A DNA stretch of 64,000 nt, taken from positions 124,001 through 188,000 of the forward strand of contig NIVC01001521.1 in the NCBI GenBank assembly GCA_002269645.1. Reading direction: 5' to 3'. Shown piece after piece: positions 1 to 23,210 of the stretch. The position numbers and the translations under genes are program-made. The notes beneath the pieces are model-generated. The model had not been told where the DNA came from. It worked only from the letters and a program-made list of their open reading frames with translations, and made no database searches. The first letter of the stretch is position 1, and the number at the start of each line of letters is the position of its first letter. Source of the stretch: Macrostomum lignano (taxonomy: Eukaryota).

Positions 1-3000
1 GGTGAGTTCAGTGTGTCTTTCGAGGTGAGTTCAGTGTGTCTTTCGAGGTGAGTTCAGTGTGTCTTTCGAGGTGAGTTCAGTGTGTCTTTCGAGGTGAGTT
101 CAGTGTGTCTTTCGAGGTGAGTTCAGTGTGTCTTTCGAGGTGAGTTCAGTGTGTCTTTCGAGGTGAGTTCAGTGTGTCTTTCGAGGTGAGTTCAGTGTGT
201 CTTTCGAGGTGAGTTCAGTGTGTCTTTCGAGGTGAGTTCAGTGTGTCTTTCGAGGTGAGTTCAGTGTGTCTTTCGAGGTGAGTTCAGTGTGTCTTTCGAG
301 GTGAGTTCAGTGTGTCTTTCGAGGTGAGTTCAGTGTGTCTTTCGAGGTGAGTTCAGTGTGTCTTTCGAGGTGAGTTCAGTGTGTCTTTCGAGGTGAGTTC
401 AGTGTGTCTTTCGAGGTGAGTTCAGTGTGTCTTTCGAGGTGAGTTCAGTGTGTCTTTCGAGGTGAGTTCAGTGTGTCTTTCGAGGTGAGTTCAGTGTGTC
501 TTTCGAGGTGAGTTCAGTGTGTCTTTCGAGGTGAGTTCAGTGTGTCTTTCGAGGTGAGTTCAGTGTGTCTTTCGAGGTGAGTTCAGTGTGTCTTTCGAGG
601 TGAGTTCAGTGTGTCTTTCGAGGTGAGTTCAGTGTGTCTTTCGAGGTGAGTTCAGTGTGTCTTTCGAGGTGAGTTCAGTGTGTCTTTCGAGGTGAGTTCA
701 GTGTGTCTTTCGAGGTGAGTTCAGTGTGTCTTTCGAGTGAGTTCAGTGTGTCTTTCGAGGTGAGTTCAGTGTGTCTTTCGAGGTGAGTTCAGTGTGTCTT
801 TCGAGGTGAGTTCAGTGTGTCTTTCGAGGTGAGTTCAGTGTGTCTTTCGAGTGAGTTCAGTGTGTCTTTCGAGGTGAGTTCAGTGTGTCTTTCGAGTGAG
901 TTCAGTGTGTCTTTCGAGGTGAGTTCAGTGTGTCTTTCGAGGTGAGTTCAGTGTGTCTTTCGAGGTGAGTTCAGTGTGTCTTTCGAGGTGAGTTCAGTGT
1001 GTCTTTCGAGGTGAGTTCAGTGTGTCTTTCGAGGTGAGTTCAGTGTGTCTTTCGAGGTGAGTTCAGTGTGTCTTTCGAGGTGAGTTCAGTGTGTCTTTCG
1101 AGGTGAGTTCAGTGTGTCTTTCGAGGTGAGTTCAGTGTGTCTTTCGAGGTGAGTTCAGTGTGTCTTTCGAGGTGAGTTCAGTGTGTCTTTCGAGGTGAGT
1201 TCAGTGTGTCTTTCGAGGTGAGTTCAGTGTGTCTTTCGAGGTGAGTTCAGTGTGTCTTTCGAGGTGAGTTCAGTGTGTCTTTCGAGGTGAGTTCAGTGTG
1301 TCTTTCGAGGTGAGTTCAGTGTGTCTTTCGAGGTGAGTTCAGTGTGTCTTTCGAGGTGAGTTCAGTGTGTCTTTCGAGGTGAGTTCAGTGTGTCTTTCGA
1401 GGTGAGTTCAGTGTGTCTTTCGAGGTGAGTTCAGTGTGTCTTTCGAGGTGAGTTCAGTGTGTCTTTCGAGGTGAGTTCAGTGTGTCTTTCGAGGTGAGTT
1501 CAGTGTGTCTTTCGAGGTGAGTTCAGTGTGTCTTTCGAGGTGAGTTCAGTGTGTCTTTCGAGGTGAGTTCAGTGTGTCTTTCGAGGTGAGTTCAGTGTGT
1601 CTTTCGAGGTGAGTTCAGTGTGTCTTTCGAGGTGAGTTCAGTGTGTCTTTCGAGGTGAGTTCAGTGTGTCTTTCGAGGTGAGTTCAGTGTGTCTTTCGAG
1701 GTGAGTTCAGTGTGTCTTTCGAGGTGAGTTCAGTGTGTCTTTCGAGGTGAGTTCAGTGTGTCTTTCGAGGTGAGTTCAGTGTGTCTTTCGAGGTGAGTTC
1801 AGTGTGTCTTTCGAGGTGAGTTCAGTGTGTCTTTCGAGGTGAGTTCAGTGTGTCTTTCGAGGTGAGTTCAGTGTGTCTTTCGAGGTGAGTTCAGTGTGTC
1901 TTTCGAGGTGAGTTCAGTGTGTCTTTCGAGTGAGTTCAGTGTGTCTTTCGAGGTGAGTTCAGTGTGTCTTTCGAGGTGAGTTCAGTGTGTCTTTCGAGGT
2001 GAGTTCAGTGTGTCTTTCGAGGTGAGTTCAGTGTGTCTTTCGAGTGAGTTCAGTGTGTCTTTCGAGGTGAGTTCAGTGTGTCTTTCGAGTGAGTTCAGTG
2101 TGTCTTTCGAGGTGAGTTCAGTGTGTCTTTCGAGGTGAGTTCAGTGTGTCTTTCGAGGTGAGTTCAGTGTGTCTTTCGAGGTGAGTTCAGTGTGTCTTTC
2201 GAGTGAGTTCAGTGTGTCTTTCGAGGTGAGTTCAGTGTGTCTTTCGATGTGAGTTTAGTGTGTCTTTCGAGGTGAGTTCAGTGTGTCTTTCGAGGTGAGT
2301 TCAGTGTGTCTTTCGAGGTGAGTTCAGTGTGTCTTTCGAGGTGAGTTCAGTGTGTCTTTCGAGGTGAGTTCAGTGTGTCTTTCGAGGTGAGTTCAGTGTG
2401 TCTTTCGAGGTGAGTTCAGTGTGTCTTTCGAGGTGAGTTCAGTGTGTCTTTCGAGGTGAGTTCAGTGTGTCTTTCGAGGTGAGTTCAGTGTGTCTTTCGA
2501 GGTGAGTTCAGTGTGTCTTTCGAGGTGAGTTCAGTGTGTCTTTCGAGGTGAGTTCAGTGTGTCTTTCGAGGTGAGTTCAGTGTGTCTTTCGAGGTGAGTT
2601 CAGTGTGTCTTTCGAGGTGAGTTCAGTGTGTCTTTCGAGGTGAGTTCAGTGTGTCTTTCGAGGTGAGTTCAGTGTGTCTTTCGAGGTGAGTTCAGTGTGT
2701 CTTTCGAGGTGAGTTCAGTGTGTCTTTCGAGGTGAGTTCAGTGTGTCTTTCGAGGTGAGTTCAGTGTGTCTTTCGAGGTGAGTTCAGTGTGTCTTTCGAG
2801 GTGAGTTCAGTGTCTTTCGAGGTGAGTTCAGTGTGTCTTTCGAGGTGAGTTCAGTGTGTCTTTCGAGGTGAGTTCAGTGTGTCTTTCGAGGTGAGTTCAG
2901 TGTGTCTTTCGAGGTGAGTTCAGTGTGTCTTTCGAGGTGAGTTCAGTGTGTCTTTCGAGGTGAGTTCAGTGTGTCTTTCGAGGTGAGTTCAGTGTGTCTT

Positions 3001-5880
3001 TCGAGGTGAGTTCAGTGTGTCTTTCGAGGTGAGTTCAGTGTCTTTCGAGGTGAGTTCAGTGTGTCTTTCGAGGTGAGTTCAGTGTGTCTTTCGAGGTGAG
3101 TTCAGTGTGTCTTTCGAGGTGAGTTCAGTGTGTCTTTCGAGTGAGTTCAGTGTGTCTTTCGAGGTGAGTTCAGTGTGTCTTTCGAGGTGAGTTCAGTGTG
3201 TCTTTCGAGGTGAGTTCAGTGTGTCTTTCGAGGTGAGTTCAGTGTGTCTTTCGAGTGAGTTCAGTGTGTCTTTCGAGGTGAGTTCAGTGTGTCTTTCGAG
3301 GTGAGTTCAGTGTGTCTTTCGAGGTGAGTTCAGTGTGTCTTTCGAGGTGAGTTCAGTGTCTTTCGAGGTGAGTTCAGTGTGTCTTTCGAGGTGAGTTCAG
3401 TGTGTCTTTCGAGGTGAGTTCAGTGTGTCTTTCGAGGTGAGTTCAGTGTGTCTTTCGAGGTGAGTTCAGTGTGTCTTTCGAGGTGAGTTCAGTGTGTCTT
3501 TCGAGGTGAGTTCAGTGTGTCTTTCGAGGTGAGTTCAGTGTGTCTTTCGAGGTGAGTTCAGTGTGTCTTTCGAGGTGAGTTCAGTGTGTCTTTCGAGGTG
3601 AGTTCAGTGTGTCTTTCGAGGTGAGTTCAGTGTGTCTTTCGAGGTGAGTTCAGTGTGTCTTTCGAGGTGAGTTCAGTGTCTTTCGAGGTGAGTTCAGTGT
3701 GTCTTTCGAGGTGAGTTCAGTGTGTCTTTCGAGGTGAGTTCAGTGTGTCTTTCGAGGTGAGTTCAGTGTGTCTTTCGAGGTGAGTTCAGTGTGTCTTTCG
3801 AGGTGAGTTCAGTGTGTCTTTCGAGGTGAGTTCAGTGTGTCTTTCGAGGTGAGTTCAGTGTGTCTTTCGAGGTGAGTTCAGTGTGTCTTTCGAGGTGAGT
3901 TCAGTGTCTTTCGAGGTGAGTTCAGTGTGTCTTTCGAGGTGAGTTCAGTGTGTCTTTCGAGGTGAGTTCAGTGTGTCTTTCGAGGTGAGTTCAGTGTGTC
4001 TTTCGAGGTGAGTTCAGTGTGTCTTTCGAGGTGAGTTCAGTGTGTCTTTCGAGGTGAGTTCAGTGTGTCTTTCGAGGTGAGTTCAGTGTGTCTTTCGAGG
4101 TGAGTTCAGTGTGTCTTTCGAGATGAGTTCAGTGTGTCTTTCGAGGTGAGTTCAGTGTGTCTTTCGAGATGAGTTCAGTGTGTCTTTCGAGGTGAGTTCA
4201 GTGTGTCTTTCGAGTGAGTTCAGTGTGTCTTTCGAGGTGAGTTCAGTGTGTCTTTCGAGTGAGTTCAGTGTGTCTTTCGAGATGAGTTCAGTGTGTCTTT
4301 CGAGGTGAGTTCAGTGTGTCTTTCGAGATGAGTTCAGTGTGTCTTTCGAGGTGAGTTCAGTGTGTCTTTCGAGGTGAGTTCAGTGTGTCTTTCGAGGTGA
4401 GTTCAGTGTGTCTTTCGAGGTGAGTTCAGTGTGTCTTTCGAGGTGAGTTCAGTGTGTCTTTCGAGGTGAGTTCAGTGTCTTTCGAGGTGAGTTCAGTGTG
4501 TCTTTCGAGGTGAGTTCAGTGTGTCTTTCGAGGTGAGTTCAGTGTGTCTTTCGAGGTGAGTTCAGTGTGTCTTTCGAGGTGAGTTCAGTGTGTCTTTCGA
4601 GGTGAGTTCAGTGTGTCTTTCGAGGTGAGTTCAGTGTGTCTTTCGAGGTGAGTTCAGTGTGTCTTTCGAGGTGAGTTCAGTGTGTCTTTCGAGGTGAGTT
4701 CAGTGTGTCTTTCGAGGTGAGTTCAGTGTGTCTTTCGAGGTGAGTTCAGTGTGTCTTTCGAGGTGAGTTCAGTGTGTCTTTCGAGGTGAGTTCAGTGTGT
4801 CTTTCGAGGTGAGTTCAGTGTCTTTCGGGTGAGTTCAGTGTGTCTTTCGAGGTGAGTTCAGTGTGTCTTTCGAGGTGAGTTCAGTGTGTCTTTCGAGGTG
4901 AGTTCAGTGTGTCTTTCGAGGTGAGTTCAGTGTGTCTTTCGAGGTGAGTTCAGTGTGTCTTTCGAGGTGAGTTCAGTGTGTCTTTCGAGGTGAGTTCAGT
5001 GTGTCTTTCGAGGTGAGTTCAGTGTGTCTTTCGAGGTGAGTTCAGTGTCTTTCGAGGTGAGTTCAGTGTGTCTTTCGAGGTGAGTTCAGTGTGTCTTTCG
5101 AGGTGAGTTCAGTGTGTCTTTCGAGGTGAGTTCAGTGTGTCTTTCGAGGTGAGTTCAGTGTGTCTTTCGAGGTGAGTTCAGTGTCTTTCGAGGTGAGTTC
5201 AGTGTGTCTTTCGAGGTGAGTTCAGTGTGTCTTTCGAGGTGAGTTCAGTGTGTCTTTCGAGGTGAGTTCAGTGTGTCTTTCGAGTGAGTTCAGTGTGTCT
5301 TTCGAGGTGAGTTCAGTGTGTCTTTCGAGGTGTTCAGTGTGTCTTTCGAGGTGAGTTCAGTGTGTCTTTCGAGGTGAGTTCAGTGTGTCTTTCGAGGTGA
5401 GTTCAGTGTGTCTTTCGAGGTGAGTTCAGTGTGTCTTTCGAGGTGAGTTCAGTGTGTCTTTCGAGGTGAGTTCAGTGTGTCTTTCGAGGTGAGTTCAGTG
5501 TGTCTTTCGAGGTGAGTTCAGTGTGTCTTTCGAGGTGAGTTCAGTGTGTCTTTCGAGGTGAGTTCAGTGTGTCTTTCGAGGTGAGTTCAGTGTGTCTTTC
5601 GAGTGAGTTCAGTGTGTCTTTCGAGGTGAGTTCAGTGTGTCTTTCGAGTGAGTCAGTGTGTCTTTCGAGGTGAGTTCAGTGTGTCTTTCGAGGTGAGTTC
5701 AGTGTGTCTTTCGAGGTGAGTTCAGTGTGTCTTTCGAGGTGAGTTCAGTGTGTCTTTCGAGGTGAGTTCAGTGTGTCTTTCGAGGTGAGTTCAGTGTCTT
5801 TCGAGGTGAGTTTGCAGTGTGTCTTTCGAGGTGAGTTCAGCGTGTCTTTCGAGCAGGTGTCTTTCGAGGTGAGTTCAGGT
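1..5880. repeat. 23-bp tandem satellite (GGTGAGTTCAGTGTGTCTTTCGA)n, ~255 copies, continues past window start
   Basis: Direct: near-perfect 23-nt period; variants are mostly loss of one G or of one TG. Confidence 0.99.
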
Positions 5881-10370: not shown

Positions 10371-11474
10371 TATAGAATCATAATCATATGCAGAGTCTAC
10401 ATATATATTTTATATATTATATATATGCATATTGAATTTTTATAACTAGTATTCAGCTTCACTACAAATATTAATTTCCAAATGTTACACAATAGCAGAT
10501 AAGGCATTTTGTCAATATTTAGTAGAGATTGCTATTTACTATTTGTTTCTAAATATTTTTTTTAAATTTGATTTAAGTAAAACTAATTGAAATATTTTGG
10601 TTTATCTAATTTGTATAAATTATTTGGTTTCACAAATTCAAATGATATATTTTTCAGATGAACTAAATAAACAAAATTCAAGTATTATTATAGTGCAAAG
10701 TGTAGTATACATTAAATGGTTTTATAGTTAATTACTATTGTTATTGTTTCCACTGTAAGAATTTGATTCCTACTACTTACCTACTAGAGTGAATGCTATG
10801 CAGCTAGTATTTTGTTTTAAATATCTAATACTAGTATAAATATATATATATATATGTATCTGCAGGTCAATTTAACCTATGTAAATTGTGTCAGACTATT
10901 GGTAGGTTGCAAAATTGACAATGTTTTCTGATATTTTTGACAAATTTTGACAACAGTATAGGTTTTTACAGAATCAAACTTCTTAGTCTTCCAATTTCCT
11001 CTAAAGCCCTATTAAATCTCAACATAACATGCTCAATTGTAATACCCTCAATTCCTCTGCCTTTCTCCAAAGCACAATTATCCCTAATTCTATAACTCAA
11101 CTCTCAACTTGTTTCAAATCTTTGTGTCACATTAAAATGACTAATTGGTATTTCAATTGACAATTGTCAACTTTCCTATTCCATTTTAAAGCAAATATTT
11201 GGTTGATTCAATTTGGAAGTTTTAATCTAAGATAAATTTTATGAGATTGTCAAATAACTTTGATCATGCTTAATATTTATTGTTTTAGTGTTTAACATTT
11301 GCATTTTAACTTTTGATAAAAATTTGGTCATTGTCAAATTATCTCTATCTAGTGATTTTTGTCATGAAATAGTATAATTATTAATTCAATATTCATATTT
11401 TTGACATTCTTGGTTTATTATTATTTTTTGACCTAATTCTAAAAAAATTATATAAAAAAACACATTCTGCTACT

Positions 11475-12933
11475 ATGATGACAACTTCAAGCACTGGTTG
11501 GATGCGCTATCCAAGTATGTCGGTACCTAATGTGACTATTTCAATGCGCCTGTTTCAAGCATTGAAAAATCCTGCAGAGGTGCACACTGCTGCTATTCAA
11601 GGTCACCTTGCTGGAGCTTTGGTGTCAACTAAATTAGTGAGCTTTTGCAGCAACTGTGCTTGTATTAGTGAGATTCTGAATAAGTCAAGGGTATTAGCAG
11701 CCTTCTAAATGACCCATGGGGTATTAGCGACCTTCTAAATGACCCTTGGGGTATTAGCGACCATCTAAATGACCCCTGGGGTATTAGCGACCTTCTAAAT
11801 GACCCCTGGGGGTATTAGCGACCTTCTAAATGACCCCTGGGTTATTAGCGACCTTCCAAATGACCCCTGGAGCATTAGCGACCTTCTAAATGACCCCTGG
11901 GGGTATTAGCGACCTTCTAAATGACCCCTGGGGTATTAGCGCCCTTCTAAATGACCCCTGGGGGTATTAGCGACCTTCTAAATGACCCCTGGGGTATTAG
12001 CGATCTTCTAAATGACCCCTGGGGTATTAGCGACTTTCTAAATGACCCCTGGGGTATTAGCGACCTTCTAAATGACCCCTGGGGTATTAGCGACCTTCTA
12101 AATGACCCCTGGGTTATTAGCGACCTTCCAAATGACCCCTGGGGTATTAGCGACCTTCTAAATGACCCCTGGGTTATTAGCGACCTTCCAAATGACCCCT
12201 GGGGTATTAGCGACCTTCTAAATGACCCCTGGGGTATTGGCGACCTTCTAAATGACCCCTGGGGTATTAGCGATCTTCTAAATGACCCCTGGGGTATTAG
12301 CGACCTTCTAAATGACCCCTGGGGGTATCTTTTGACCTTCTAAGTGACCCAAAACGGTATTAGCGACCTTCTAAATGACCCATGGGGTATTAGCGGTCTT
12401 CTAAATGACCTGTAGGGGTATTAGCGACCTTTTATGAATAAATAACCCATAGGGTATTAGCGACCTTCTAAATGACATAAATTTGTCATTGATCTCAGGT
12501 GTACGACAGCTTGCACCTGCTCACAGCCGCCAATCAAGCTTTGGCTCATCAATCGGAGTCTCGCATGGCAACTAAATCAATTCACACGGAACTGCTGTAC
12601 TGTCTATCGCCAACAAAAAATATCAGTCAATCTTTAGCCAAGTTCGGTATGAACTCCAGCACTGCCAGTGTAGTTGCTGTGCTGTTTCATCCCCAATCAG
12701 CTGATATCTCGTCCGCTAGCCTAGACGGATTAGAATCCAAGTTGACCAGTCAACTAGATTGCGAATCTAGCCATTCACTGTGGCCCGACACTAATCCCGA
12801 GTGCGATCTTGTCGAACTATTTGAACTGTACAAAGTCACACCGGAGGAGCAGGCCCTGTCAAAGGAATCTGGAGATTCGCTCAGTTACTGTTTTGTAACC
12901 AGAGTCGCTTGCAAAGATGTGGTTACCGTGTAG
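11475..12933 (+). CDS. TPRKB: EKC/KEOPS complex subunit TPRKB (CGI-121); join(11475..11636,12499..12933), ~198 aa
   Basis: Donor TTA|GTGAGC and acceptor TCTCAG|GTG, both phase 0. The product contains LLTAANQAL..RMATKSIHTELLYCLSPTKNISQSLAKFG, the CGI-121 signature. Confidence 0.92.
11690..12475. repeat. 30-bp minisatellite (GGGGTATTAGCGACCTTCTAAATGACCCCT)n filling the TPRKB intron
   Basis: Direct periodicity; gives the spurious (ISDLLNDPWG)n ORF. Confidence 0.97.
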
Positions 12934-13114
12934 GACTGCAATTTTAAGTGTTGCTCTCTTGTTTATATTACTATCAGTAGCTTAATTGCAAGTTTTTATT
13001 TGTTCAATTATTGTGTCAAAGTAAATTGTTGTTAACCTACCATTAGGTCTTTATTGCTTCTGTGAATTTTTTTGTGTTTGCTTGGTTATTTGTTAGTAAT
13101 CGATTTTCTAAGTA

Positions 13115-13840
13115 ATATATAAGTTCTGAGTAAACTGTGGACTCTAAGGATCAGTTCTGAGTAGACTGTGGACTCTAAGGGTCAGTTCTGAGTAGACTGG
13201 ACTCTAAGGATCAGTTCTGAGTAGACTGTGGACTCTAAGGATCAGTTCTGAGTAGACTGTGGACTCTAAGGACCAGTTCTGAGTAGACTGTGGACTCTAA
13301 GGGTCAGTTCTGAGTAGACTGTGGACTCTAAGGGTCAGTTCTGAGTAGACTGTGGACTCTAAGGATCAGTTCTGAGTAGACTGTGAACTCTAAGGGTCAG
13401 TTCTGAGTAGACTGGGGACTGTAAGGATCAGTTCTGAGTAGACTGGGGACTCTGAGGATCAGTTCTGAGTAGACTGGGGACTCTAAGGACCAGTTCTGAG
13501 TAGACTGGGGACTGTAAGGATCAGTTCTGAGTAGACTGTGGACTCTAAGGATCAGTTCTGAGTAGACTGTGGACTCTAAGGACCAGTTCTGAGTAGACTG
13601 TGGACTCTAAGGGTCAGTTCTGAGTAGACTGTGGACTCTAAGGGTCAGTTCTGAGTAGACTGTGGACTCTAAGGATCAGTTCTGAGTAGACTGTGAACTC
13701 TAAGGGTCAGTTCTGAGTAGACTGGGGACTGTAAGGATCAGTTCTGAGTAGACTGGGGACTCTGAGGATCAGTTCTGAGTAGACTGGGGACTCTAAGGAT
13801 CAGTTCTGAGTAGACTGGGGACTCTAAGGATCAGTTCTGG
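13115..13840. repeat. 31-bp minisatellite (GACTCTAAGGATCAGTTCTGAGTAGACTGTG)n between TPRKB and the next ORF
   Basis: Direct periodicity, ~23 copies. Confidence 0.97.
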
Positions 13841-13910
13841 ATAATCTAGATAGCCATGACAATATGATTTTTAGCTACACTTATTCCCTAATCCCTAATC
13901 TTCGCGCAAG

Positions 13911-14675
13911 GATTCCGAAGTGTCACAACTGTGGCAACGTCACTCGCGCCAACTTGTAGACTTGGCGCTGGACTACCGCGCCACAAGCGTCAGACTGCGC
14001 TCTTCGACTCGTCAGCTGAGACAAGATTTAAAACTAGCTCTGTCCAAAGCTGATGATGAGAATAAAAGCACAAGTGAAGCTGATAGTGATCATGAATCTT
14101 ATTCTTCATCGTCCAGTTCGAGTTCAAACGAGTCTTTATCGAATAATTTAGAATCACCGGATGAGGCTGAGATCAGCAGGCTGATTCGATCTCACTCCAG
14201 GTGTCTGTCAATTGTCAATCAGTTGAGAAATTTGTCAAGCACCGCTTTGACCTTGGCTGGTCGATGTGAGGCCACTTTGAGACTGGACCAAACTGCAGTA
14301 GCCTGCTGCCCTGCACTGCCTGGCGGCAGTCTGACTAGGAATCAGCTGATTGAAGCCGCCAACTTCGTTGCTAAGGCATTTGAAGCGGATAGCAACGAAA
14401 AATCTAATCAACTGACTGTCCTGTGTCACCATGGCAACCAAAAGGCTGGCCTACTGGCTTATCACTGTTTAACTTTTAATGTGTTTAAGAGAGTGCCTCC
14501 TGCCAGCGCAGAAACTGTTGGTGAATTGTGCTTGAGAGTTGCTTTCGATTTGTCTGCTGCTTTGAGCTGCATTGCCGCTGCTGCCGACTCTAAGAAACGA
14601 AGAACTTCTGCTTCTACCCCTGTTGGTGTTGATTTATCTGCCTGCGTTGCTGCTTTTAGAAGTCTATCGCAATGA
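13911..14675 (+). CDS. 254-codon methionine-free exon, tentatively CINP-like (CDK2-interacting protein family)
   Basis: Non-repetitive stop-free frame starting at a phase-0 acceptor (CCCTAATCTTCGCGCAAG|GAT). It has a helical N-terminus, a Ser/Asp/Glu linker and PALP...LIEAANFVAKAFEADSNEK...LCHHG...LLAY, which recalls the CINP C-terminal half. Coding status is well supported; the family call is from memory and weak. Confidence 0.7.
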   Translation, partial: DSEVSQLWQRHSRQLVDLALDYRATSVRLRSSTRQLRQDLKLALSKADDENKSTSEADSDHESYSSSSSSSSNESLSNNLESPDEAEISRLIRSHSRCLSIVNQLRNLSSTALTLAGRCEATLRLDQTAVACCPALPGGSLTRNQLIEAANFVAKAFEADSNEKSNQLTVLCHHGNQKAGLLAYHCLTFNVFKRVPPASAETVGELCLRVAFDLSAALSCIAAAADSKKRRTSASTPVGVDLSACVAAFRSLSQ

Positions 14676-14849
14676 GTTTGTGCATTGTACGAGCTCACAG
14701 TCTAGTTGAAAAGTTTACAAATATATTATTTGAAAATAGTTGGTATTATAGCCAATAGTCTTGCTGAAAGATTTACGAGTTTGTGATAATGATAGTGGCT
14801 ATCGTATAGTATGACCCCAAAAGTGTTGTATAACCGTTAGTACGTCGTA

Positions 14850-15480
14850 TGATCCCATGAACCTTAAAAATATCCTAGGACCTAAAGAATATCCTAAAAT
14901 ATCCCAGGAATATCCTAGGACCTAAAGAATATCCCATGACCCTAAAGAATATCCCATGACCCCAAAGAATATTCCATGACCCCAAAGAATATCCCATGAC
15001 CCTAAAGAATATCCCATGACCCTAAAGAATATCCCATGACCCTAAAGAATATCCCATGACCCCAAAGAATATTCCATGACCCCAAAGAATATCCCATGAC
15101 CCTAAAGAATATCCCATGACCCCAAAGAATATCCCAAGACCCCAAAGAATATCCCATGACCCTTAAGGATAGTTAATGACCCTAAAGAATATCCCAAGAC
15201 CCCAAAGAATATCCTATGACCCTAAAGAATATCTCAAGACCCCAAAGAATATCCCATGACCCTAAAGAATATCCCAAAACGCCAAAGAATATCCAATGAC
15301 CATAAAGAATATCCCATGACCCTAAAGTGTATCCCAAGACGCCAAAAAATATCCAATGACCATGAAGAATATTCCATTATGAGTCTACATTATACCCCAT
15401 GACCCTAAAGAACATTCCATGAACTTAAACAATTTTTTACCCTAAGATGTATCCTATGACCCTGAAGACCTTATAACCCC
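14850..15480. repeat. 20-bp minisatellite (ATCCCATGACCCTAAAGAAT)n, degenerate at edges
   Basis: Direct periodicity. Confidence 0.95.
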
Positions 15481-15528
15481 CTGGAAAAGTGATTGCAAAA
15501 GCAGAAATCATAAAGCATTCGCCAAAAA

Positions 15529-17721
15529 ATGATACTCCAGCCAGACTCGGAATCCAACTGCGCCATCAGTGATGAGGCTGCAATTTACAGCCTCCCAGGC
15601 GCTTCATCATCTTCACCGTCAGCTCCGACCGCAGTCGCATCTCCCCTGCGCCGTCTGGCGGTTGGCGCCGCTTGCGCGGCCGGCGCCCTAGGCATGGTGT
15701 TCGCGGCGGCGCCCTTTCTGACGCCGGCGCTGAGGCGCCACGCGCTGCCGTTTGTACCGGCCACCGACAGCCAGGTGGCCAATGTGTTCAGCTTGCTCAA
15801 GAAGAATAACAGAATTACTAAGGTGCCCAGCATGCCAGTGAGACTGGTTAGTGAGCGGCCATCTACACTCATTGAAATATCACTTTAAAAAAACTTTTTT
15901 AAATGTTTTTTTATCTTCTCAAATCACTGTTAGAATCACATCATAAAAAATCGCGCCATGAAGAGTGACACCATAAATAATCATACCTTGAAGAGTCACA
16001 CCATAAAGAATAACATCAGGAAGAATCACAACTTAAAGAATAACATCAGGAAGAATCACACCATGAAGAATCACAACATGAAGAATCACACCATGAAGAA
16101 TCACACCATGAAGAATCACACCATGAAGAATCACAACATGAAGAATCACACCATGAAGAATCACATCATGAAGAATCACATCATGAAGAATCACATCATT
16201 AAGAATCACACCATGAAGAATCACACCATGAAGAATCACACCATGAAGAATCACACCATGAAGAATCACACCATGAAGAATCACATCATGAAGAATCACA
16301 CCATGAAGAATCACACCATGAAGAATCACACCATGAAGAATCACACCATGAAGAATCACACCATGAAGAATCACACCATAAAGAGTCACACCATGAAGAA
16401 TCACACTATGAAGATTCACACCATAAGGAGTCACACCATGAAGAGTCACACCATGAAGAGTCACACCATAAAGAATCACACCATGAAGAATCACATCATA
16501 AAGAGTCACACTATGAAGAATCACACCATGAAGAATCACACCATAAAGAATCACACCATGAAGAATCACACCATGAAGAGTCACACCATGAAGAATCACA
16601 TCAGGAAGAATCACATCAGGAAGAATCACACCATGAAGAATCACATCAGGAAGAATCACATCATGAAGAATCACATCATGAAGAATCACATCATGAAGAA
16701 TCACAACATGAAGAATCACACCATGAAGAATCACACCATGAAGAGTCACACTATGAAGAATCACACCATGAAGAATCACATCATGAAGAATCACACCATG
16801 AAGAACCACACCATGAAGAATCACACCATGAAGAATCACACAATAAAGAATCACAACATGAAGAATCACACTATGAAGAATCACACCATGAAGAATCACA
16901 TCATGAAGAGTCACACCATGAAGAGTCACACCATGAAGAATCACATCATGAAGAGTCACACTATGAAGAATCACATCATGAAGAATCAGATCATGAAGAG
17001 TCACAGTATGAAGAATCACACCATGAAGAGTCACACTATGAATAATCACACCATGAAGAATCACACCATGAAGAATCACACAATAAAGAATCACACAATA
17101 AAGAATCACACCATGAGAAGTCACACCATGAAGAATCACACCATGAAGAATCACATCATGAAGAATCACACCATGAAGAATCACACCATGAAGAATCACA
17201 CCATGAAGAATCACACCATGAAGAATCAACCCATAAAGAATCACACCATGAAGAATCAAACCATGAAGAGTCACACCATGAAGAACCGCTTAACTCCCTC
17301 ACACCAGATAGACCTTGGCTCCGGAGACGGTCGCATTGTACGCGAAGCGGCACTCCGCCTGTACCAAGCCACTGGTGTCGAGCTCAACTGGCCCCTGGTG
17401 CTGTACAGTCGCCTCACCTGTTCCCGTCTCAACTGCATTCATCGTCCGAAATTCCTACGAACCGACCTGCTCCGCCACTCGCTGTCCACATACGATGTTG
17501 TGGTGATATTCGGGGTGAAGTCTTTAATGAAACCCTTGCAAGCCAAGCTGGCGGCTGAGTTGCATCCAGATGCCTGCGTGGTGGCTTGTCGGTACCGACT
17601 GCCCGACTGGAGACATGTCGACCAGATTATTGACGGGGTGGACTCCGTGTGGCTGTACCGGCCACCTGCGGCTGCTGCTGCTGCTGCCAGGACTGGCGGT
17701 GCTGCGAGAGCTTGGAGTTGA
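15529..17721 (+). CDS. FAM173: FAM173-family mitochondrial protein-lysine methyltransferase (ATPSCKMT/ANTKMT-like); join(15529..15846,17308..17721), ~243 aa
   Basis: N-terminal TM segment then PFLTPALRRHALPFVPATDSQVANV. Donor CTG|GTTAGT and acceptor ACACCAG|ATA give VRLIDLGSGDGRIV (SAM motif I), then GVELNWPLV, YDVVVIFGVKSLM, ACRYRLP.W. The paralog cannot be resolved. Confidence 0.92.
15955..17285. repeat. 15-bp minisatellite (AAGAATCACACCATG)n in the FAM173 intron, ~88 copies
   Basis: Direct periodicity with substitution variants. Confidence 0.98.
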
Positions 17722-17769
17722 TGCCGGATGCTGCATCCTACTTGTTATTTTGCTGCTGTTTTTTTGAGT

Positions 17770-18915
17770 TGCCTCTCTCCCTTCTCTTCCTGCCTCTCTC
17801 CCTGCCTCTCTCCCTGCCTCTCTCCCTGCCTCTCTCCCTGTCTCTCTCCCTGTCTCTCTCCCTGTCTCTCTCCCTGCCTCTCTCCCTGCATCTCTCCCTG
17901 CCTCTCTCCCTGCCTCTCTCCCTGCCTCTCCCTGCCTCTCTCCCTGCCTCTCTCCCTGCCTCTCTCCCTGCCTCTCTCCCTGTCTCTCTCTGCCTCTCTC
18001 CCTTCTCTCCCTGCCTCTCTCCCTGCCTCTCTCCCTGCCTCTCTCCCTGCCTCTCTCCCTGCCTCTCTCCCTGTCTCTCTCCCTGCCTCTCTCCCTGTCT
18101 CTCTCTGCCTCTCTCCCTTCTCTCCCTGCCTCTCTCCCTGTCTCTCTCTGCCTCTCTCCCTTCTCTCCCTGCCTCTCTCCCTGCCTCTCTCCCTGTCTCT
18201 CTCCCTGCCTCTCTCCCTTCTCTCCCTGCCTCTCTCCCTGCCTCTCTCCCTGCCTCTCTCCCTGTCTCTCTCTGCCTCTCTCCCTTCTCTCCCTGCCTCT
18301 CTCCCTGCCTCTCTCCCTGCCTCTCTCCCTGCCTCTCTCCCTGCCTCTCTCCCTGCCTCTCTCCCTGCCTCTCTCCCTGTCTCTCTCCCTGTCTCTCTCC
18401 CTGCCTCTCTCCCTGCCTCTCTCCCTGCCTCTCTCCCTGCCTCTCTCCCTGCCTCTCTCCCTGTCTCTCTCCCTGCCTCTCTCCCTGTCTCTCTCCCTGC
18501 CTCTCTCCCTGCATCTCTCCCTGCCTCTCTCCCTGCCTCTCTCCCTGCCTCTCCCTTCTCTCCCTGCCTCTCTCCCTGCCTCTCTCCCTGCCTCTCTCCC
18601 TGCCTCTCCCTGCCTCTCTCCCTTCTCTCCCTGCCTCTCTCCCTGCCTCTCTCCCTTCTCTCCCTGCCTCTCTCTGCTTCTCTCCCTGCCTCTCTCCCTT
18701 CTCTCCCTGCCTCTCTCCCTGCCTCTCTCCCTGCCTCTCCCTGCCTCTCTCCCTTCTCTCCCTGCCTCTCTCCCTGCCTCTCTCCCTTCTCTCCCTGCCT
18801 CTCTCTGCTTCTCCCCCTACCTCTCTCTGCCTCTCTCCCTGTCTCTCTTCTTGCCTCTCCCTGCCTCTCTCCCTGCCTATCTCCCTGCCTCTCTCCCTGC
18901 TTCTCTCCCTGCCTC
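17770..18915. repeat. Pyrimidine-rich 12-bp repeat (CTCTCTCCCTGC)n downstream of the FAM173 stop
   Basis: Direct periodicity. Confidence 0.97.
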
Positions 18916-19288
18916 AATCTGCAAAGCACAAAATTCTACCATATCCCAGAGCTACATGGGCTGCAATGTCCCGTTTTTCAACCGTTAAATTAAATTTTAT
19001 AACTTCTACAAGTCATTTGTGTCTGTTTGAAAAATCTTAGTGTTTTAAATAAAAAATTCGGTTCTGAATATTTTTACTTAATCTTTAGAAGTAGCCGTGT
19101 TACTTCCGTCATTCTGATAGTAATGAATTTATGTTAGCTATTTTCTTTTAAAGATTTAGGCAAGACATAGTTGTATACACGCTAGGGCAGGTACTTCAGT
19201 ACGCAACATCCTATTTTGGTGTATAGTGAATAAATATGTACTGAAAAAAATTTGAAGGAATTAGATAGAATGTATACTATGGAAATAG

Positions 19289-19324
19289 GGACAGACAGAC
19301 AGACAGACTGGCAGGCAGGCAGGC

Positions 19325-19361
<37 letters not shown>

Positions 19362-19420
19362 GGCAGGCAGACAGACAGACAGACAGACAGATAGACAGAT
19401 AGACAGACAGACAGACACTC

Positions 19421-19471
<51 letters not shown>

Positions 19472-19492
19472 TAGACAGACAGACAGACACTC

Positions 19493-19531
<39 letters not shown>

Positions 19532-19622
19532 AAGACATACAGATAGATACAAACAGACAGACAGACAGAGACAAACAGACAGACAGACAGATACAAACAG
19601 AGAGACAGGCAGACAGACAGAC
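19289..19622. repeat. (GACA)n microsatellite upstream of KXD1
   Basis: Direct. Confidence 0.98.
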
Positions 19623-19679
19623 ACTCAGGTGTACGGTTGAACTAGGTATCACTGCAGTGCAACATCCACTTCAGACTGA

Positions 19680-20201
19680 ATGACATCGAACTCCGGCAGC
19701 AGCAGCCATGATGGTGCCACAGCAGCAGCAGCAGCAGCAGCTGATGACAGCGATGGTCAGATGTCTCCTCAGCAGAGACAGCAGCAGCTGCGCCGGCAGA
19801 CATTAGTGAATCCCCAGAGACCGGAAGCTCTCACTGGCTCATTTCTATCCATGATTGACCGGCCCTCCCTGCACGTGATCACAGTGTCTCAGACTGAGAT
19901 GCTTGAGAGATTCGAGCGGGCCAATCATATGCTGTCAAATTTCAATGAACTCTCGCTGGGACGATTTCGCCAGCTGAGTGGGGAGTTCCGGCAGCACCAG
20001 CAGACTCTGGACGAGTTGCGGAAAGATCTTGAGCTGGTGTTTAAAAGGATTAATAATATTAAACGGCTGACTGAGAGAGCTTATCCTGAGCACTATGCTG
20101 CATCTGTGGCGGCTGTGGGCGAGCTGGTACCCCTGAGTCAGGCTGCCTCTGAGCATGATCTTGCTAGCAATACTACTACTCAGTCTGCTGCTAATCAGTA
20201 G
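19680..20201 (+). CDS. KXD1: KxDL motif-containing protein 1 (BORC/BLOC-1-related), single coding exon, 173 aa
   Basis: FLSMID...SQTEMLERFERANHMLSNFNELSLGRF...LDELRKDLELVFKRI...YPE matches the KXD1 pattern. Confidence 0.92.
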   Translation: MTSNSGSSSHDGATAAAAAAADDSDGQMSPQQRQQQLRRQTLVNPQRPEALTGSFLSMIDRPSLHVITVSQTEMLERFERANHMLSNFNELSLGRFRQLSGEFRQHQQTLDELRKDLELVFKRINNIKRLTERAYPEHYAASVAAVGELVPLSQAASEHDLASNTTTQSAANQ

Positions 20202-20239
20202 TAGCTAAATGAATTCTTCAAGTTTAGGTTCAAATAAGT

Positions 20240-20470
20240 AATGATAATAATAATAATTTATTATTAAGTCTGTCCTAATTTGCAACTGAAGGCTGCGTAC
20301 GGCTATTCAGTCCAAGGACTTGTAGGTCGCCACACACCCATAATTACCCCATTTTACAGCAGGGTGAACTGGAGAAATGCATGAGTTAAGTGTCTTGCTC
20401 AAGGACACAAATTATTGTTCCTAGTGGGTCGAGAATCGTAACCCCGACCTTTCAGTCGTGGTATTGGATC
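20240..20470 (-). mobile_element. tRNA-derived CORE-type SINE, 5'-degenerate copy
   Basis: The reverse complement carries GTGTCCTTGAGCAAGACACTTAACTC...CTGTAAAATGGGG and an (ATT)-rich tail; homologous to the copies at 21412 and 63675. Confidence 0.85.
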
Positions 20471-20658
20471 ATAATTTTACCTTTATTGTGGAAGATCAAC
20501 AAAGTTTTAATTACTAGTTACATAGCTACGAAATTGACCTAAACTTGAAGCAGTCTGTCACTACTATACTGTCTTTGATTCAGTTTTTTATCATTGAAAT
20601 TTATATTCTTAAATCGGGTAAATTCGCTTACTCACACCTTTCGTTTCAAACAATATAC

Positions 20659-20690
20659 CTGACGATGCACCTTGGTGTGCGAAACGCGTC
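20659..20690 (+). ncRNA. Minimal type-I hammerhead ribozyme motif of Penelope-like element type (helix I degenerate)
   Basis: CTGACGA-TGCACC-TT-GGTGTG-C-GAAAC-GC-GTC: catalytic boxes, a pairable helix II, palindromic helix III (ACGCGT) and a GUC triplet. Confidence 0.6.
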
Positions 20691-21411
20691 GAAAAAAACC
20701 AAATGTTGATTTTCGGATTTCTTTTTATTATATTCTTAATTGAAGACTAGCTTACAGTTGCGTAAATCTTCATTAACAAGACACCTCTAGTCCTGGGGTG
20801 TCCTGCAATGACTATCCAAGAGGTTAGATGGTCGCTCGCCCGGTAGCCCTTATTTATAGGTAGCGGACGTTCACAGATAAGGTTCTCCGCATTCTCAACA
20901 CCGGATGGACCGAATTGATCCACTTTAATTAAGCAACATTGTCACACAACCGGCAAGATGCAATACTCCCCATTCTCTGAGCAGGCACTCACACAGGAGT
21001 GCACAGCGGCCCAAACTTTATCTATCTTTAAGGCATGTACACTTCACTGTGCTTTTGGGGTTTGGTCCTTAAGGGTGTTAATTGCACGAGCAGAGCCAAG
21101 CTTAACATTTTAAGGAAAAAGGCCTCCGACTGCTTGCCTTCTCGGTGGTTACAGACCCTTATTGATTTAAAGTTGATTTCTTAGAATTTTATGATTTGTT
21201 GAAAAGAAGCATATGTTGTTGTAATTGTAACTATCAGTTAACAATGGCTCCCTTATGTTTGAAATAAAATTTCTTAGAATCCGTTATATTGTTATATGTT
21301 ATACTTGTATGTTATGTAAATATAAAATTCTGTTTTATTGTTTCGTTAACTTTTTGTTGTTTATATTTTCTTATTTTCTTATTTCTACTTTCAGTAGCAT
21401 TAAAAGAATAA

Positions 21412-21655
21412 GGGGGGTTGTAGCCTAGTGGTTAGAGCTTCGAACTTACGACTTGAATGTCGGGGGTTCAATTCTCGACCTCACCGAAACAACTAGTGTC
21501 CTTGAGCAAGACACTTAACTCTGCATTGCTTCAGTTCACTCAGCTGTAAAATGGGTGCCAGCATTAGCTGGAGTAATTTAGTGTGTGTAGTGACCCCCAG
21601 ACCTTGGACTAAACAGCCGTACGCTGCCTTCAGATATGGCTATGTCGGTTGCAGT
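21412..21655 (+). mobile_element. tRNA-derived CORE-type SINE
   Basis: A box TAGCCTAGTGG and B box GGTTCAATTC, then a MIR/CORE-like block TGTCCTTGAGCAAGACACTTAACTCTG...CAGCTGTAAAATGGG. Confidence 0.88.
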
Positions 21656-21737
21656 AAGATTTTTTCAAATAATTTATGTTTAAAATGTCTCTTTATTGCA
21701 AATTCTAGTTGTTCCAGCTGTTTTTTGTGACTCACAT

Positions 21738-22321
21738 ATGACTTCGGCAAAGCAGTTTGGTGAGTCAATACCTGTGAGCAGGGACTGGTACAGCGTGTTG
21801 GGCGTCTCATCGCAAGCCGATCAATCCAGTATCAGAGCCGCATGGAAAACTGCATGTCTCAAGTATCACCCAGATAAAAACCCAGATGCTGAGGAATTTC
21901 ATCTGATTAACATGGCCTATTCTGTGCTGCGAGATGCCAACTTGAGGCGAGTGTACGATGCAGCACTGATGCTGAGCAGGCGGGAACAGGTGAATGAGCA
22001 GCTCGAGGTTGTGTTGGGGTCTGTTTGCCTTTGAATGCTTGTGAATCAATTTATCTAAGCTGGGTGGTATTCAGGTGTCAAAGGGTGTCTGGGGTGCCTG
22101 TGTGAGGAATATTGGGGTGTCTTAAACAATTGCATCAACCCCTGGCAGGACCACCCTGTTCAAGAGGAGCTCACGGTGACCGAACTACTGGACAATCAGA
22201 TGGAAGAAGATTGCACAGCCGCTTGTCTGGATGCAGCTCACGGGACTCTGCTGAGCAGCTTTCAGTGCTTTTGGGACTGCCGCTGCGGGGACCGGGTGAG
22301 TTTTCGGGGATTGGGTCTGCT

Positions 22322-22369
<48 letters not shown>

Positions 22370-22709
22370 GGCAGACAGACGGACAGGCAGACAGACAGAC
22401 AGGCAGGCAGGCAGACAGACAGGCAGGCAGGCAGACAGACAGGCAGGCAGACAGACAGGCAGGCAGGCAGAAAGGCAGACAGACAGACAGGCAGGCAGGC
22501 AGGCAGAAAGGCAGACAGACAGACAGGCAGAAAGGCAGACAGACAGGCAGGCAGGCAGAAAGGCAGACAGACAGGCAGGCAGGCAGAAAGGCAGACAGAC
22601 AGACAGGCAGGCAGACAGACATGCAGAAAGACAGACAGACAGACAGTCAGAAAGGCAGACAGTCAGACAGGCAGGCAGAAATGCAGACAGAGAGACAGAC
22701 AGACAGACA

Positions 22710-22746
<37 letters not shown>

Positions 22747-22855
22747 ACAGACAGACAGACGACAGACAGACAGACAGACAGGAAGGCAGAAAGGCAGACA
22801 GAGAGACAGGAAGGCAGAAAGGCAGACAGACAGACAGGCAGGCAGAAATGCAGAC

Positions 22856-22921
<66 letters not shown>

Positions 22922-23210
22922 ACACACAGACAGGAAGGCAGAAAGGCAGACAGACAGACAGACAGACAGACAGACAGGAAGGCAGACAGACAGACAGGTA
23001 GGCAGAAAGGCAGACAACTCACAACAGCCACCCGCAATTGCACAGGTGGGTATTCACGCAGCCCAGCTGCTGTCCCGCTTGCCACTGCTGCAGTGCCAGA
23101 CCTGCTCCCTGTGTTTGCGAATATTGTACGACGAATCCGAGCCTCGAACTCGCGACCTCCTGGCCAGATTGGCTGCCGAAGCGGAGCCGATCCAGCAAGA
23201 AGCGGACTGA
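21738..23210 (+). CDS. DNAJC24: DnaJ homolog subfamily C member 24 (DPH4); join(21738..21989,22149..22295,23046..23210), ~187 aa
   Basis: J domain with YHPDK, then a CSL zinc finger (CRCG...CQTCSL) reconstituted across intron 2; all junctions GT-AG and phase 0. Confidence 0.92.
22322..23015. repeat. (GACA/GGCA)n compound microsatellite in DNAJC24 intron 2
   Basis: Direct. Confidence 0.98.

What the first reader, a model, noticed from the sequence alone, without database searches (positions are those of the whole stretch)
13840..14675. A 254-codon gene with no methionine and no available ATG exon: candidate for a start codon donated by a spliced leader
Seen: the frame contains no ATG codon. 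It begins in phase 0 at an acceptor (branch-like CCCTAAT, ...GCGCAAG|GAT TCC GAA GTG) and has an in-frame TAA just upstream. From the TPRKB stop (12933) to 13850 I find no ATG. The two ATGs at ~13856-13864 do not read into this frame and have no GT donor after them. Established: flatworm spliced leaders end in AUG, which can act as the initiator Met (shown in Schistosoma). Inference: SL-AUG joined at 13911 gives MDSEVSQLWQRH..., so the gene could not be translated without trans-splicing. A second unusual option also fits: the TPRKB exon-1 donor (11636) is phase 0, so skipping to 13911 would make an in-frame chimera sharing TPRKB's first exon.
Basis: partly seen in the sequence, partly recalled or inferred. 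Interest (0 to 1): 0.82.

Follow-up and report, generated by a model that had tools for sequence, protein, structure and literature searches.

The report
Flatworm gene needing spliced-leader start codon
A small, species-restricted gene of the flatworm Macrostomum lignano has no ATG of its own and almost certainly gets its start codon from the ATG that ends the spliced leader, which is a clean new example of a mechanism shown in schistosomes in 2006.

Summary
An open frame runs from 13899 to the TGA at 14673-14675 with no ATG codon. No + strand ATG lies between 12917 and 13856. The ATGs at 13856 and 13864 are out of frame, and no GT donor follows them.

The window is Macrostomum lignano (GCA_002269645.1, contig NIVC01001521.1). 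Its single 35-nt spliced leader ends in ATG. GenBank annotates this ORF as a 5'-partial protein of 254 aa that starts at 13911, directly after an AG. In both other genomic copies the gene is named g2 of a transcriptional unit whose g1 is CGI-121/TPRKB. By the genome paper's naming, that makes it a downstream cistron cut out at a trans-splice signal.

All three copies show the same ATG-less layout with no indel. The frame is under purifying selection (pN/pS 0.09-0.42, against 0.45 to above 4 in the other frames). Spliced leader plus exon gives MDSEVSQ..., 255 codons; every other AUG in that mRNA opens 32 codons or fewer.

No reads were available, so the junction itself is inferred. The mechanism is already known from Schistosoma (Cheng et al. 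2006), so this is a new member of a known kind, of modest interest. The in-frame chimera with TPRKB exon 1 is possible but has no support.

The parts
11475..11636 (+). CGI-121/TPRKB exon 1: 54 codons from ATG 11475, with a phase-0 donor (GTGAGC from 11637). GenBank starts the CDS at 11472 as 'partial' (199 aa) only because the frame is open one codon upstream of the ATG.
11689..12476 (.). 30-nt tandem repeat (about 26 copies) that fills the TPRKB intron
12499..12933 (+). CGI-121/TPRKB exon 2, including the TAG stop at 12931-12933. This is the first cistron of the transcriptional unit.
   Evidence: Pfam PF08617, E = 7.3e-24
12934..13910 (+). Intercistronic region (TPRKB 3' UTR plus the outron of the next gene), 977 nt. 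It holds no ATG until 13856. One AGTAAA (a possible poly(A) signal variant) lies at 13020.
13122..13839 (.). 31-nt tandem repeat (23 copies, no ATG in the unit) that inflates the intercistronic distance. Without it the distance is 259 nt.
   Evidence: operon rule of under 1 kb after subtracting repeats, PMC8629364
13856..13866 (+). The two out-of-frame ATGs (13856 in frame 2, 13864 in frame 1). No GT follows them before 13910. If trans-splicing occurs at 13911 they are removed with the outron.
13872..13874 (+). In-frame TAG whose AG is also a better-looking alternative acceptor (TTTTTAG|CTA). Using it would give spliced-leader AUG plus 7 codons, then the TAA at 13896 (MLHLFPNP*), so it is non-productive in this copy.
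13896..13898 (+). In-frame TAA that closes the frame 12 nt upstream of the exon. It reads TTA in copy L001.
13880..13910 (+). Pyrimidine-rich tract with two CTAAT branch-like motifs and the acceptor AG at 13909-13910 (GCGCAAG|). It is identical in all three genomic copies except for the A/T difference at 13897.
13911..14675 (+). Single coding exon of the orphan gene: 254 codons plus TGA, with no ATG. With the spliced leader attached the product is MDSEVSQLWQRH... (255 aa). It is predicted all-helical, with an acidic Ser-rich linker at about residues 45-85.

Best explanation
The ORF 13911-14675 is a real protein-coding gene of Macrostomum lignano. It is the second cistron of an operon whose first gene is CGI-121/TPRKB. 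The proposed mechanism runs as follows:
- The polycistronic precursor is cut by spliced-leader (SL) trans-splicing at the acceptor AAG|GAT (13910|13911).
- The 35-nt SL ends in ...UUGCAUG, so its last three bases become codon 1, in phase with GAU UCC GAA.
- The mature mRNA therefore reads cap, 32 nt, AUG GAU UCC..., and encodes a 255-aa protein, MDSEVSQ....
- The gene has no genomic AUG in frame, either upstream or internal, so AUG-initiated translation of this protein depends on trans-splicing.

Shown here: the ATG-less layout, its identity in three genomic copies, the coding constraint, the operon-type annotation, and the SL sequence (from the literature).

Inferred: the exact junction and the use of the SL AUG by ribosomes.
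For: 1. Organism and spliced leader. The three proteins of the cluster are M. lignano 'hypothetical protein ..., partial'. The M. lignano spliced leader ends in ATG (PMC8629364; PMC5173321).

2. Annotated 5' end.
- The RNA-seq-guided annotation starts the 5'-partial CDS at 13911, the first base after an AG.
- In copy L001 the frame stays open 36 nt further upstream, yet the CDS starts at the same base. The start is therefore set by the transcript's 5' end and not by a stop codon.
- In this window the TAA at 13896 means a 5'-partial ORF could only be called if the transcript begins between 13897 and 13911.

3. Operon.
- In L001, TPRKB is Mlig025748g1, this gene is g2 and KxDL is g4. In L002, TPRKB is Mlig014127g1 and this gene is g2.
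- The genome paper defines .g1 and .g2 as genes cut out of one transcriptional unit at spliced-leader and poly(A) signals (PMC5730564).
- The repeat-adjusted intercistronic distance is 259 nt, below the 1-kb operon criterion.

4. The same logic holds for a neighbour. The DnaJ/CSL gene's 5'-partial CDS (21720) begins at the first full codon after CAG| at 21715-21717.

5. Coding.
- Of 17 substitutions among the three copies, 11 are synonymous third-position changes (p = 0.008).
- pN/pS is 0.09-0.42 in this frame, against 0.45 to above 4 in the other frames.
- The only indel is 9 nt and in frame, whereas the 3' flank has 2-nt and 7-nt indels.

6. No alternative AUG.
- In the modelled spliced-leader mRNA the leader's AUG (nt 33-35) is the first AUG and opens 255 codons.
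- Every other AUG opens 32 codons or fewer.

7. No frameshift artefact. Three contigs agree base for base between 13864 and 13911.

8. Precedent. [quoted passage not shown] 2006, as summarised in PMC9851317; also PMC12582326, and PMC5832876).
Against: - No spliced-leader-containing read or cDNA was available. The junction rests on an annotation whose 5' ends are not always exact. In copy L002 the CDS of this gene starts 6 nt later, and L002's KxDL starts 9 nt inside its CDS. The neighbouring 238-aa gene starts 3 nt after a CAG.
- The acceptor GCGCAAG does not match the enriched trans-acceptor motif [T/C]TNCAG. That motif is, however, present at only 9,551 of 21,754 sites. A better-looking TTTTTAG lies 36 nt upstream and would be non-productive here.
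- The protein has no homologue outside M. lignano and no confident fold (pLDDT 53). Its reality as a protein rests on the substitution pattern among three close copies (17 substitutions).
- Translation from the spliced-leader AUG has not been shown in M. lignano in any paper I could read.
Confidence: 0.75

Rival explanations
1. Cis-spliced chimera. The phase-0 donor of TPRKB exon 1 (after 11636) skips exon 2 and joins the acceptor at 13911. The result is a 308-aa fusion that starts at the TPRKB ATG.
For: The donor and acceptor phases match, and the fusion is open to the same TGA. In parasitic flatworms trans- and cis-splicing often share acceptors (PMC12582326).
Against: - Matching phase has a 1-in-3 chance of arising by accident.
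- The annotation gives two separate genes (g1, g2) in all three copies.
- No protein model containing this ORF fused to anything exists among about 15 billion proteins.
- The event would have to skip the TPRKB poly(A) site and about 2.3 kb.
Confidence: 0.05
2. Non-AUG initiation. The mRNA, trans-spliced elsewhere or unspliced, starts translation at a near-cognate codon such as GTG 13920 or CTG 13929.
For: GTG lies at codon 4. Near-cognate starts are used in other organisms that have spliced leaders (PMC9851317).
Against: - If the spliced leader is attached at 13911, a scanning ribosome meets an in-frame AUG first.
- Unspliced precursor RNA carries the out-of-frame ATGs at 13856 and 13864 just upstream.
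- There is no positive evidence for this reading.
Confidence: 0.06
3. Assembly error. A 1-nt deletion in the assembly hides the fact that ATG 13864 is the real in-frame start.
For: The genome is a long-read assembly. ATG 13864 is open in frame 1 up to and beyond 13911.
Against: - Three independently assembled contigs are identical in length between 13864 and 13911.
- To avoid the frame-0 stops TAG 13872 and TAA 13896, the missing base would have to lie within the 12 nt 13899-13910. That stretch has no homopolymer longer than 2.
Confidence: 0.02
4. Not a protein-coding gene. The ORF is a chance open frame in a non-coding or pseudogenic part of the operon transcript.
For: It is an orphan, with no domain, no confident structure and no start codon.
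Against: - No shuffle of the window gives an open frame of 258 codons (0 of 100).
- There is a frame-specific excess of synonymous changes, and the only indel is in frame.
- The frame is kept open in all three copies.
Confidence: 0.05
5. An unannotated upstream 5' exon elsewhere, not TPRKB exon 1, supplies an ATG by cis-splicing to 13911.
For: The acceptor could in principle serve cis-splicing.
Against: - No ATG exists in the 920 nt upstream on this strand outside TPRKB.
- The annotation has the gene as a single exon in three copies.
Confidence: 0.04

Closest known systems
[quoted passage not shown]
   Same: The flatworm spliced leader ends in AUG. The acceptor is in phase with the ORF. There is no genomic AUG, so the leader supplies codon 1.
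   Different: The host is a free-living macrostomorph, not a parasitic trematode. The gene is a lineage-restricted orphan and a downstream operon cistron. Use of the AUG is inferred here, not shown experimentally.
slORFs: ORFs created by start codons inside spliced leaders (slORFfinder, PMC9851317)
   Same: The ORF exists only after the spliced leader is joined at a defined trans-splice site.
   Different: Most slORFs described there, in nematodes, Oikopleura and trypanosomes, use near-cognate NUG codons and often overlap annotated ORFs in other frames. Here a canonical AUG heads the only long conserved ORF of the mRNA.
Spliced-leader-resolved operons of M. lignano (Wudarski et al. 2017, PMC5730564; Ustyantsev and Berezikov 2021, PMC8629364)
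   Same: The genes lie on the same strand in one annotated transcriptional unit. The repeat-adjusted spacing is under 1 kb, and a tandem repeat inflates the intercistronic spacer, as those authors describe.
   Different: In the text and the supplementary files available to me, those papers do not mention the spliced-leader ATG acting as a start codon. The acceptor here deviates from their [T/C]TNCAG motif.

Membership tests
Flatworm mRNAs initiated at the spliced-leader AUG | The host's spliced leader ends in AUG | tested here: met
   The organism is identified as M. lignano. Its spliced leader reads ...CAATTTATTGCATG in two papers.
Flatworm mRNAs initiated at the spliced-leader AUG | The mRNA is trans-spliced to the spliced leader at an acceptor directly 5' of the ORF | tested here: inconclusive
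   The support is indirect only. The 5'-partial CDS starts at AG|13911 in two of three copies. The gene is named g2 of a transcriptional unit, and such units are cut at spliced-leader signals. No reads were seen, and the L002 annotation is offset by 6 nt.
Flatworm mRNAs initiated at the spliced-leader AUG | The spliced-leader AUG is in phase with the ORF at that acceptor | tested here: met
   Spliced leader plus 13911 onward translates to 255 aa, MDSEVSQ....
Flatworm mRNAs initiated at the spliced-leader AUG | No in-frame genomic AUG is available to start the conserved ORF | tested here: met
   There is no ATG in 258 codons. An in-frame stop lies at 13896. The upstream ATGs are out of frame and have no donor. 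The same holds in L001 and L002.
Flatworm mRNAs initiated at the spliced-leader AUG | The ORF is really coding | tested here: met
   pN/pS is 0.09-0.42 in this frame only; 11 of 17 substitutions fall at third positions (p = 0.008); the only indel is 9 nt and in frame. The sample is small.
Flatworm mRNAs initiated at the spliced-leader AUG | Translation is shown to start at the spliced-leader AUG | not testable with these tools
   This needs ribosome profiling, N-terminal proteomics or a reporter.
Downstream cistron of an M. lignano operon | Same strand as the upstream gene, repeat-adjusted distance under 1 kb, and a trans-spliced downstream gene | tested here: met
   The distance is 977 nt minus 718 nt of tandem repeat, which leaves 259 nt. 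The g1/g2 naming is shown, and the criterion is. The trans-splicing part is inferred, as above.
   85.1 bits against a cut-off of 25, E = 7.3e-24. UniRef names cluster members 'EKC/KEOPS complex subunit CGI121'.

The most novel reading that the evidence does not exclude
The gene is a young, lineage-restricted ORF that became protein-coding inside an operon spacer because trans-splicing hands any in-phase acceptor a cap and an AUG at once. On this reading the spliced-leader AUG lowers the barrier to de novo gene birth, and the translation of this protein is gated entirely by trans-splicing. The orphan status, the operon position, the purifying selection across three copies and the complete lack of Met codons are all compatible with this. 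None of them demonstrates it.
Probability: 0.15. Interest if true: 0.6.

Novelty: new member of a known kind. Interest (0 to 1): 0.3.

Why it matters
- All known flatworm spliced leaders keep a 3'-terminal AUG, and why they do so is still debated. Genes that cannot be translated without that AUG are the clearest argument that it is functional.
- This is a clean case: a single exon, no Met codon at all, and three concordant genomic copies. The host is an early-branching free-living flatworm in which stable transgenesis exists. An ATG-less reporter behind this outron could test spliced-leader-AUG initiation directly in vivo.
- There is also a practical point for annotation. Such genes are deposited as 'partial' (as here) or missed entirely by ab initio predictors, since no UniProt model contains this ORF. 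Gene sets for flatworms should add the spliced-leader AUG when calling ORFs on trans-spliced transcripts.

Tried and rejected
- Homology. The word-indexed search and the exhaustive HMMER search of 1.84 billion representatives found only the gene itself. The one other hit, P0004 (E = 4e-12), is a translated tandem repeat whose score is the sum of 15 copies of one weak match, so I rejected it as spurious.
- Function. Pfam gave only GSCFA at E = 0.064, below its cut-off. PDB sequence search gave only coiled-coil noise with E above 1. AlphaFold2 from the single sequence gave pLDDT 53 and an all-helical model, too poor to justify a fold search, so none was run.
- Direct transcript evidence. The protein cluster holds no run-assembly (Logan) member beginning MDSEV.... 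The supplementary tables of PMC5816591, PMC8629364 and PMC5730564 do not list Mlig008015, Mlig025748 or Mlig014127.
- Papers not held. Cheng et al. 2006 and Wasik et al. 2015 could not be read, so they are cited second-hand.
- Spliced-leader RNA gene in the window: none within 3 mismatches. Rfam found only a marginal tRNA-like hit.
- The bacterial promoter and terminator scan is irrelevant to a eukaryote and gave nothing.
- The third gene of the unit could not serve as a second test of annotated 5' ends, because its gene models differ between the copies.

Full report
**1. The observation**

I read the region and listed every ATG.
- The frame that ends at TGA 14673-14675 opens at 13899, just after an in-frame TAA at 13896-13898. 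It contains 258 sense codons, and none is ATG.
- On the + strand there is no ATG between 12917 (inside the upstream gene) and 13856.
- ATG 13856 is in frame 2 and reads ATG ACA ATA TGA. ATG 13864 is in frame 1 and ends after about 31 codons.
- No GT lies between 13856 and 13910, so neither ATG can be part of a cis-spliced mini-exon.
- AG dinucleotides end at 13874 and 13910.
- The upstream gene is CGI-121/TPRKB (Pfam PF08617, E = 7e-24). Its exons are 11475-11636 and 12499-12933, and its exon-1 donor is phase 0.

An open frame of this length never appears in 100 shuffles of the window. From base composition, about 1.4% of such ORFs would lack ATG. Only the stated start of 13840 is loose.

**2. 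Where the window comes from**

The protein search found only the ORF itself. Its 90% cluster holds three NCBI entries, all named 'hypothetical protein BOX15_Mlig..., partial [Macrostomum lignano]'.

The window is GCA_002269645.1, contig NIVC01001521.1, positions 124001-188000. Two further genomic copies lie on other contigs (L001 and L002). This fits the known partial genome duplication of the sequenced line (PMC8629364).

**3. The spliced leader (SL)**

M. lignano has a single 35-nt SL, CGGTCTCTTACTGCGAAGACTCAATTTATTGCATG (PMC8629364). The same 3' end is given independently in PMC5173321. It ends in ATG, as do nearly all reported flatworm spliced leaders (PMC12582326).

**4. Evidence that the gene is trans-spliced at 13911**

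The GenBank annotation comes from a pipeline described in PMC5730564. That pipeline assembles transcriptional units from RNA-seq and cuts them into genes at peaks of SL-trimmed reads and at poly(A) signals. It then calls ORFs with TransDecoder.

- Naming. The legend of Supplementary Fig. 5a in that paper shows that MligN.g1 and MligN.g2 are successive genes cut out of one unit. In L001, TPRKB is Mlig025748g1, this gene is g2 and the KxDL gene is g4. In L002, TPRKB is Mlig014127g1 and this gene is g2. In the window, TPRKB is Mlig008015g1. The gene is therefore annotated as the second cistron of a polycistronic unit.
- CDS start. The annotated CDS is 5'-partial and begins at 13911, the base after the AG. 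In the window the TAA at 13896 means such a call is possible only if the transcript starts between 13897 and 13911. In L001 the TAA is TTA and the frame is open 36 nt further upstream, yet the CDS starts at the same base. The start therefore reflects the transcript's 5' end.
- A neighbour behaves the same way. The 5'-partial CDS of the DnaJ/CSL gene (21720) begins at the first full codon after a consensus CAG| at 21715-21717.
- Spacing. The intercistronic distance is 977 nt, of which 718 nt is a 31-nt tandem repeat. The 259 nt that remain are well under the repeat-adjusted 1-kb operon criterion.

The weak points are these:
- I saw no reads.
- The L002 annotation starts this gene 6 nt later, and it also starts KxDL 9 nt inside its CDS. 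Annotated 5' ends are therefore not always exact.
- The acceptor GCGCAAG does not fit the enriched [T/C]TNCAG motif. That motif occurs at fewer than half of the trans-splice sites.
- A better-looking TTTTTAG| at 13874 would give spliced-leader AUG plus seven codons and then a stop (MLHLFPNP*).

**5. Is it a real coding gene?**

Among the three copies there are 17 substitutions. Eleven are synonymous third-position changes (binomial p = 0.008). Nei-Gojobori pN/pS is 0.18, 0.42 and 0.09 for the three pairs in this frame. The two pairs involving L001 give 2.0-4.1 in the other two frames; the window-L002 pair has too few differences to tell the frames apart (0.45 in frame 1, undefined in frame 2). 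The only indel in the ORF is 9 nt and in frame, whereas the 3' flank has indels of 2 and 7 nt.

The opposite strand has only short ORFs. The protein is an orphan:
- nothing outside M. lignano in either large search;
- the single extra hit is a translated tandem repeat;
- no Pfam domain and no PDB relative;
- a low-confidence, all-helical model with an acidic Ser-rich linker.

Its function is unknown. The finding concerns how it is expressed.

**6. Mechanism**

Joining the SL to 13911 gives an mRNA whose first AUG is the SL's own, at nt 33-35. That AUG is in phase and opens 255 codons (MDSEVSQLWQRH...). Every other AUG in the mRNA opens 32 codons or fewer. AUG-initiated synthesis of the conserved ORF is therefore possible only after trans-splicing at this acceptor.

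This matches what was established for Schistosoma mansoni. There the SL AUG is in frame in 28% of trans-spliced transcripts, and more than 40 cDNAs need it (Cheng et al. 2006, as summarised in PMC9851317).

**7. Rivals**

- Assembly frameshift. Three contigs agree base for base from 13864 to 13911. To avoid the frame-0 stops, the missing base would have to fall in the 12 nt 13899-13910, which contain no homopolymer run longer than 2. This is very unlikely.
- Chimera of TPRKB exon 1 with this ORF. It is in frame (308 aa), but matching phase is a 1-in-3 coincidence. All copies are annotated as separate genes, and no fused model exists in the protein collections.
- Non-AUG start at GTG 13920. It is not excluded, but it is unnecessary once the SL is attached.
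- Non-coding ORF. The substitution pattern argues against it.

**8. Novelty**

The kind is known. The example is new in two senses. It is deposited only as a 'partial' hypothetical protein. The M. lignano papers I could read do not mention the SL ATG as a start codon.

It is a convenient test case, because M. lignano is transgenic-tractable. I rate it a new member of a known kind, with interest 0.3 and confidence 0.75 in the SL-AUG mechanism.

Noticed in passing
window 11472-23210 (+): Five co-oriented called genes lie in a row: CGI-121/TPRKB, the orphan, a 238-aa protein, KxDL (PF10241) and DnaJ plus Zn_ribbon_CSL (DPH4-like). In copy L001 the first four are named g1-g4 of one transcriptional unit, so this is probably a long operon. 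No further gene is called up to about 30.2 kb.
   Followed up: partly
window 21715-21741: The 5'-partial CDS of the DnaJ/CSL gene starts 2 nt after a consensus TTCCAG| acceptor. A spliced leader joined there would put its AUG out of frame, creating an 8-codon upstream ORF whose TGA overlaps the genomic ATG at 21738. The same leader AUG would therefore act as a start in one cistron and as an upstream-ORF start in another.
   Followed up: partly
window 15529-15547: The 238-aa gene has sub-threshold SAM-methyltransferase hits in its last exon. It is annotated from 15544, yet an in-frame genomic ATG lies at 15529 and tandem acceptors CCAG|CCAG| lie at 15537-15544. A spliced leader joined at 15540|15541 would also be in frame (MPDSES...). 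This may be a second case where the leader AUG replaces a genomic one. The annotated start fits neither acceptor exactly.
   Followed up: partly
window 15932-17285: A 15-nt tandem repeat (90 copies) inside that gene's intron produces a spurious 587-aa ORF of HTMKN-like repeats. The gene models for this locus differ widely between the three genomic copies (238, 477 and 412 aa).
   Followed up: no
L002 about 11120-11140, against window 19665-19680: The likely trans-splice acceptor of KxDL (CTTCAG|ACTGAATG in the window and in L001) reads CTTCTG in copy L002. There the annotated CDS starts 9 nt inside the ORF. Either that copy has lost its acceptor or its annotation is ragged.
   Followed up: no
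window 1-5853 and throughout: The window starts with a 23-nt tandem repeat of 256 copies with a strong GC skew of about +0.45. It also holds about 30 further large tandem arrays with periods of 3-36 nt. These include arrays that fill the TPRKB intron and the intercistronic spacers.
   Followed up: no
window 21414-21483 (+): A marginal tRNA-like sequence (Rfam RF00005, 30.2 bits against a cut-off of 29) lies about 230 nt upstream of the DnaJ gene's acceptor. ARAGORN does not call it. It may be a tRNA-derived element or a pseudogene.
   Followed up: partly
window 11472: TPRKB is deposited as 'partial' (199 aa, beginning TMM...) only because the frame is open one codon upstream of its ATG at the transcript's 5' end. 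In this annotation, 'partial' often marks an ORF that is open to the 5' end, not a truncated gene.
   Followed up: yes
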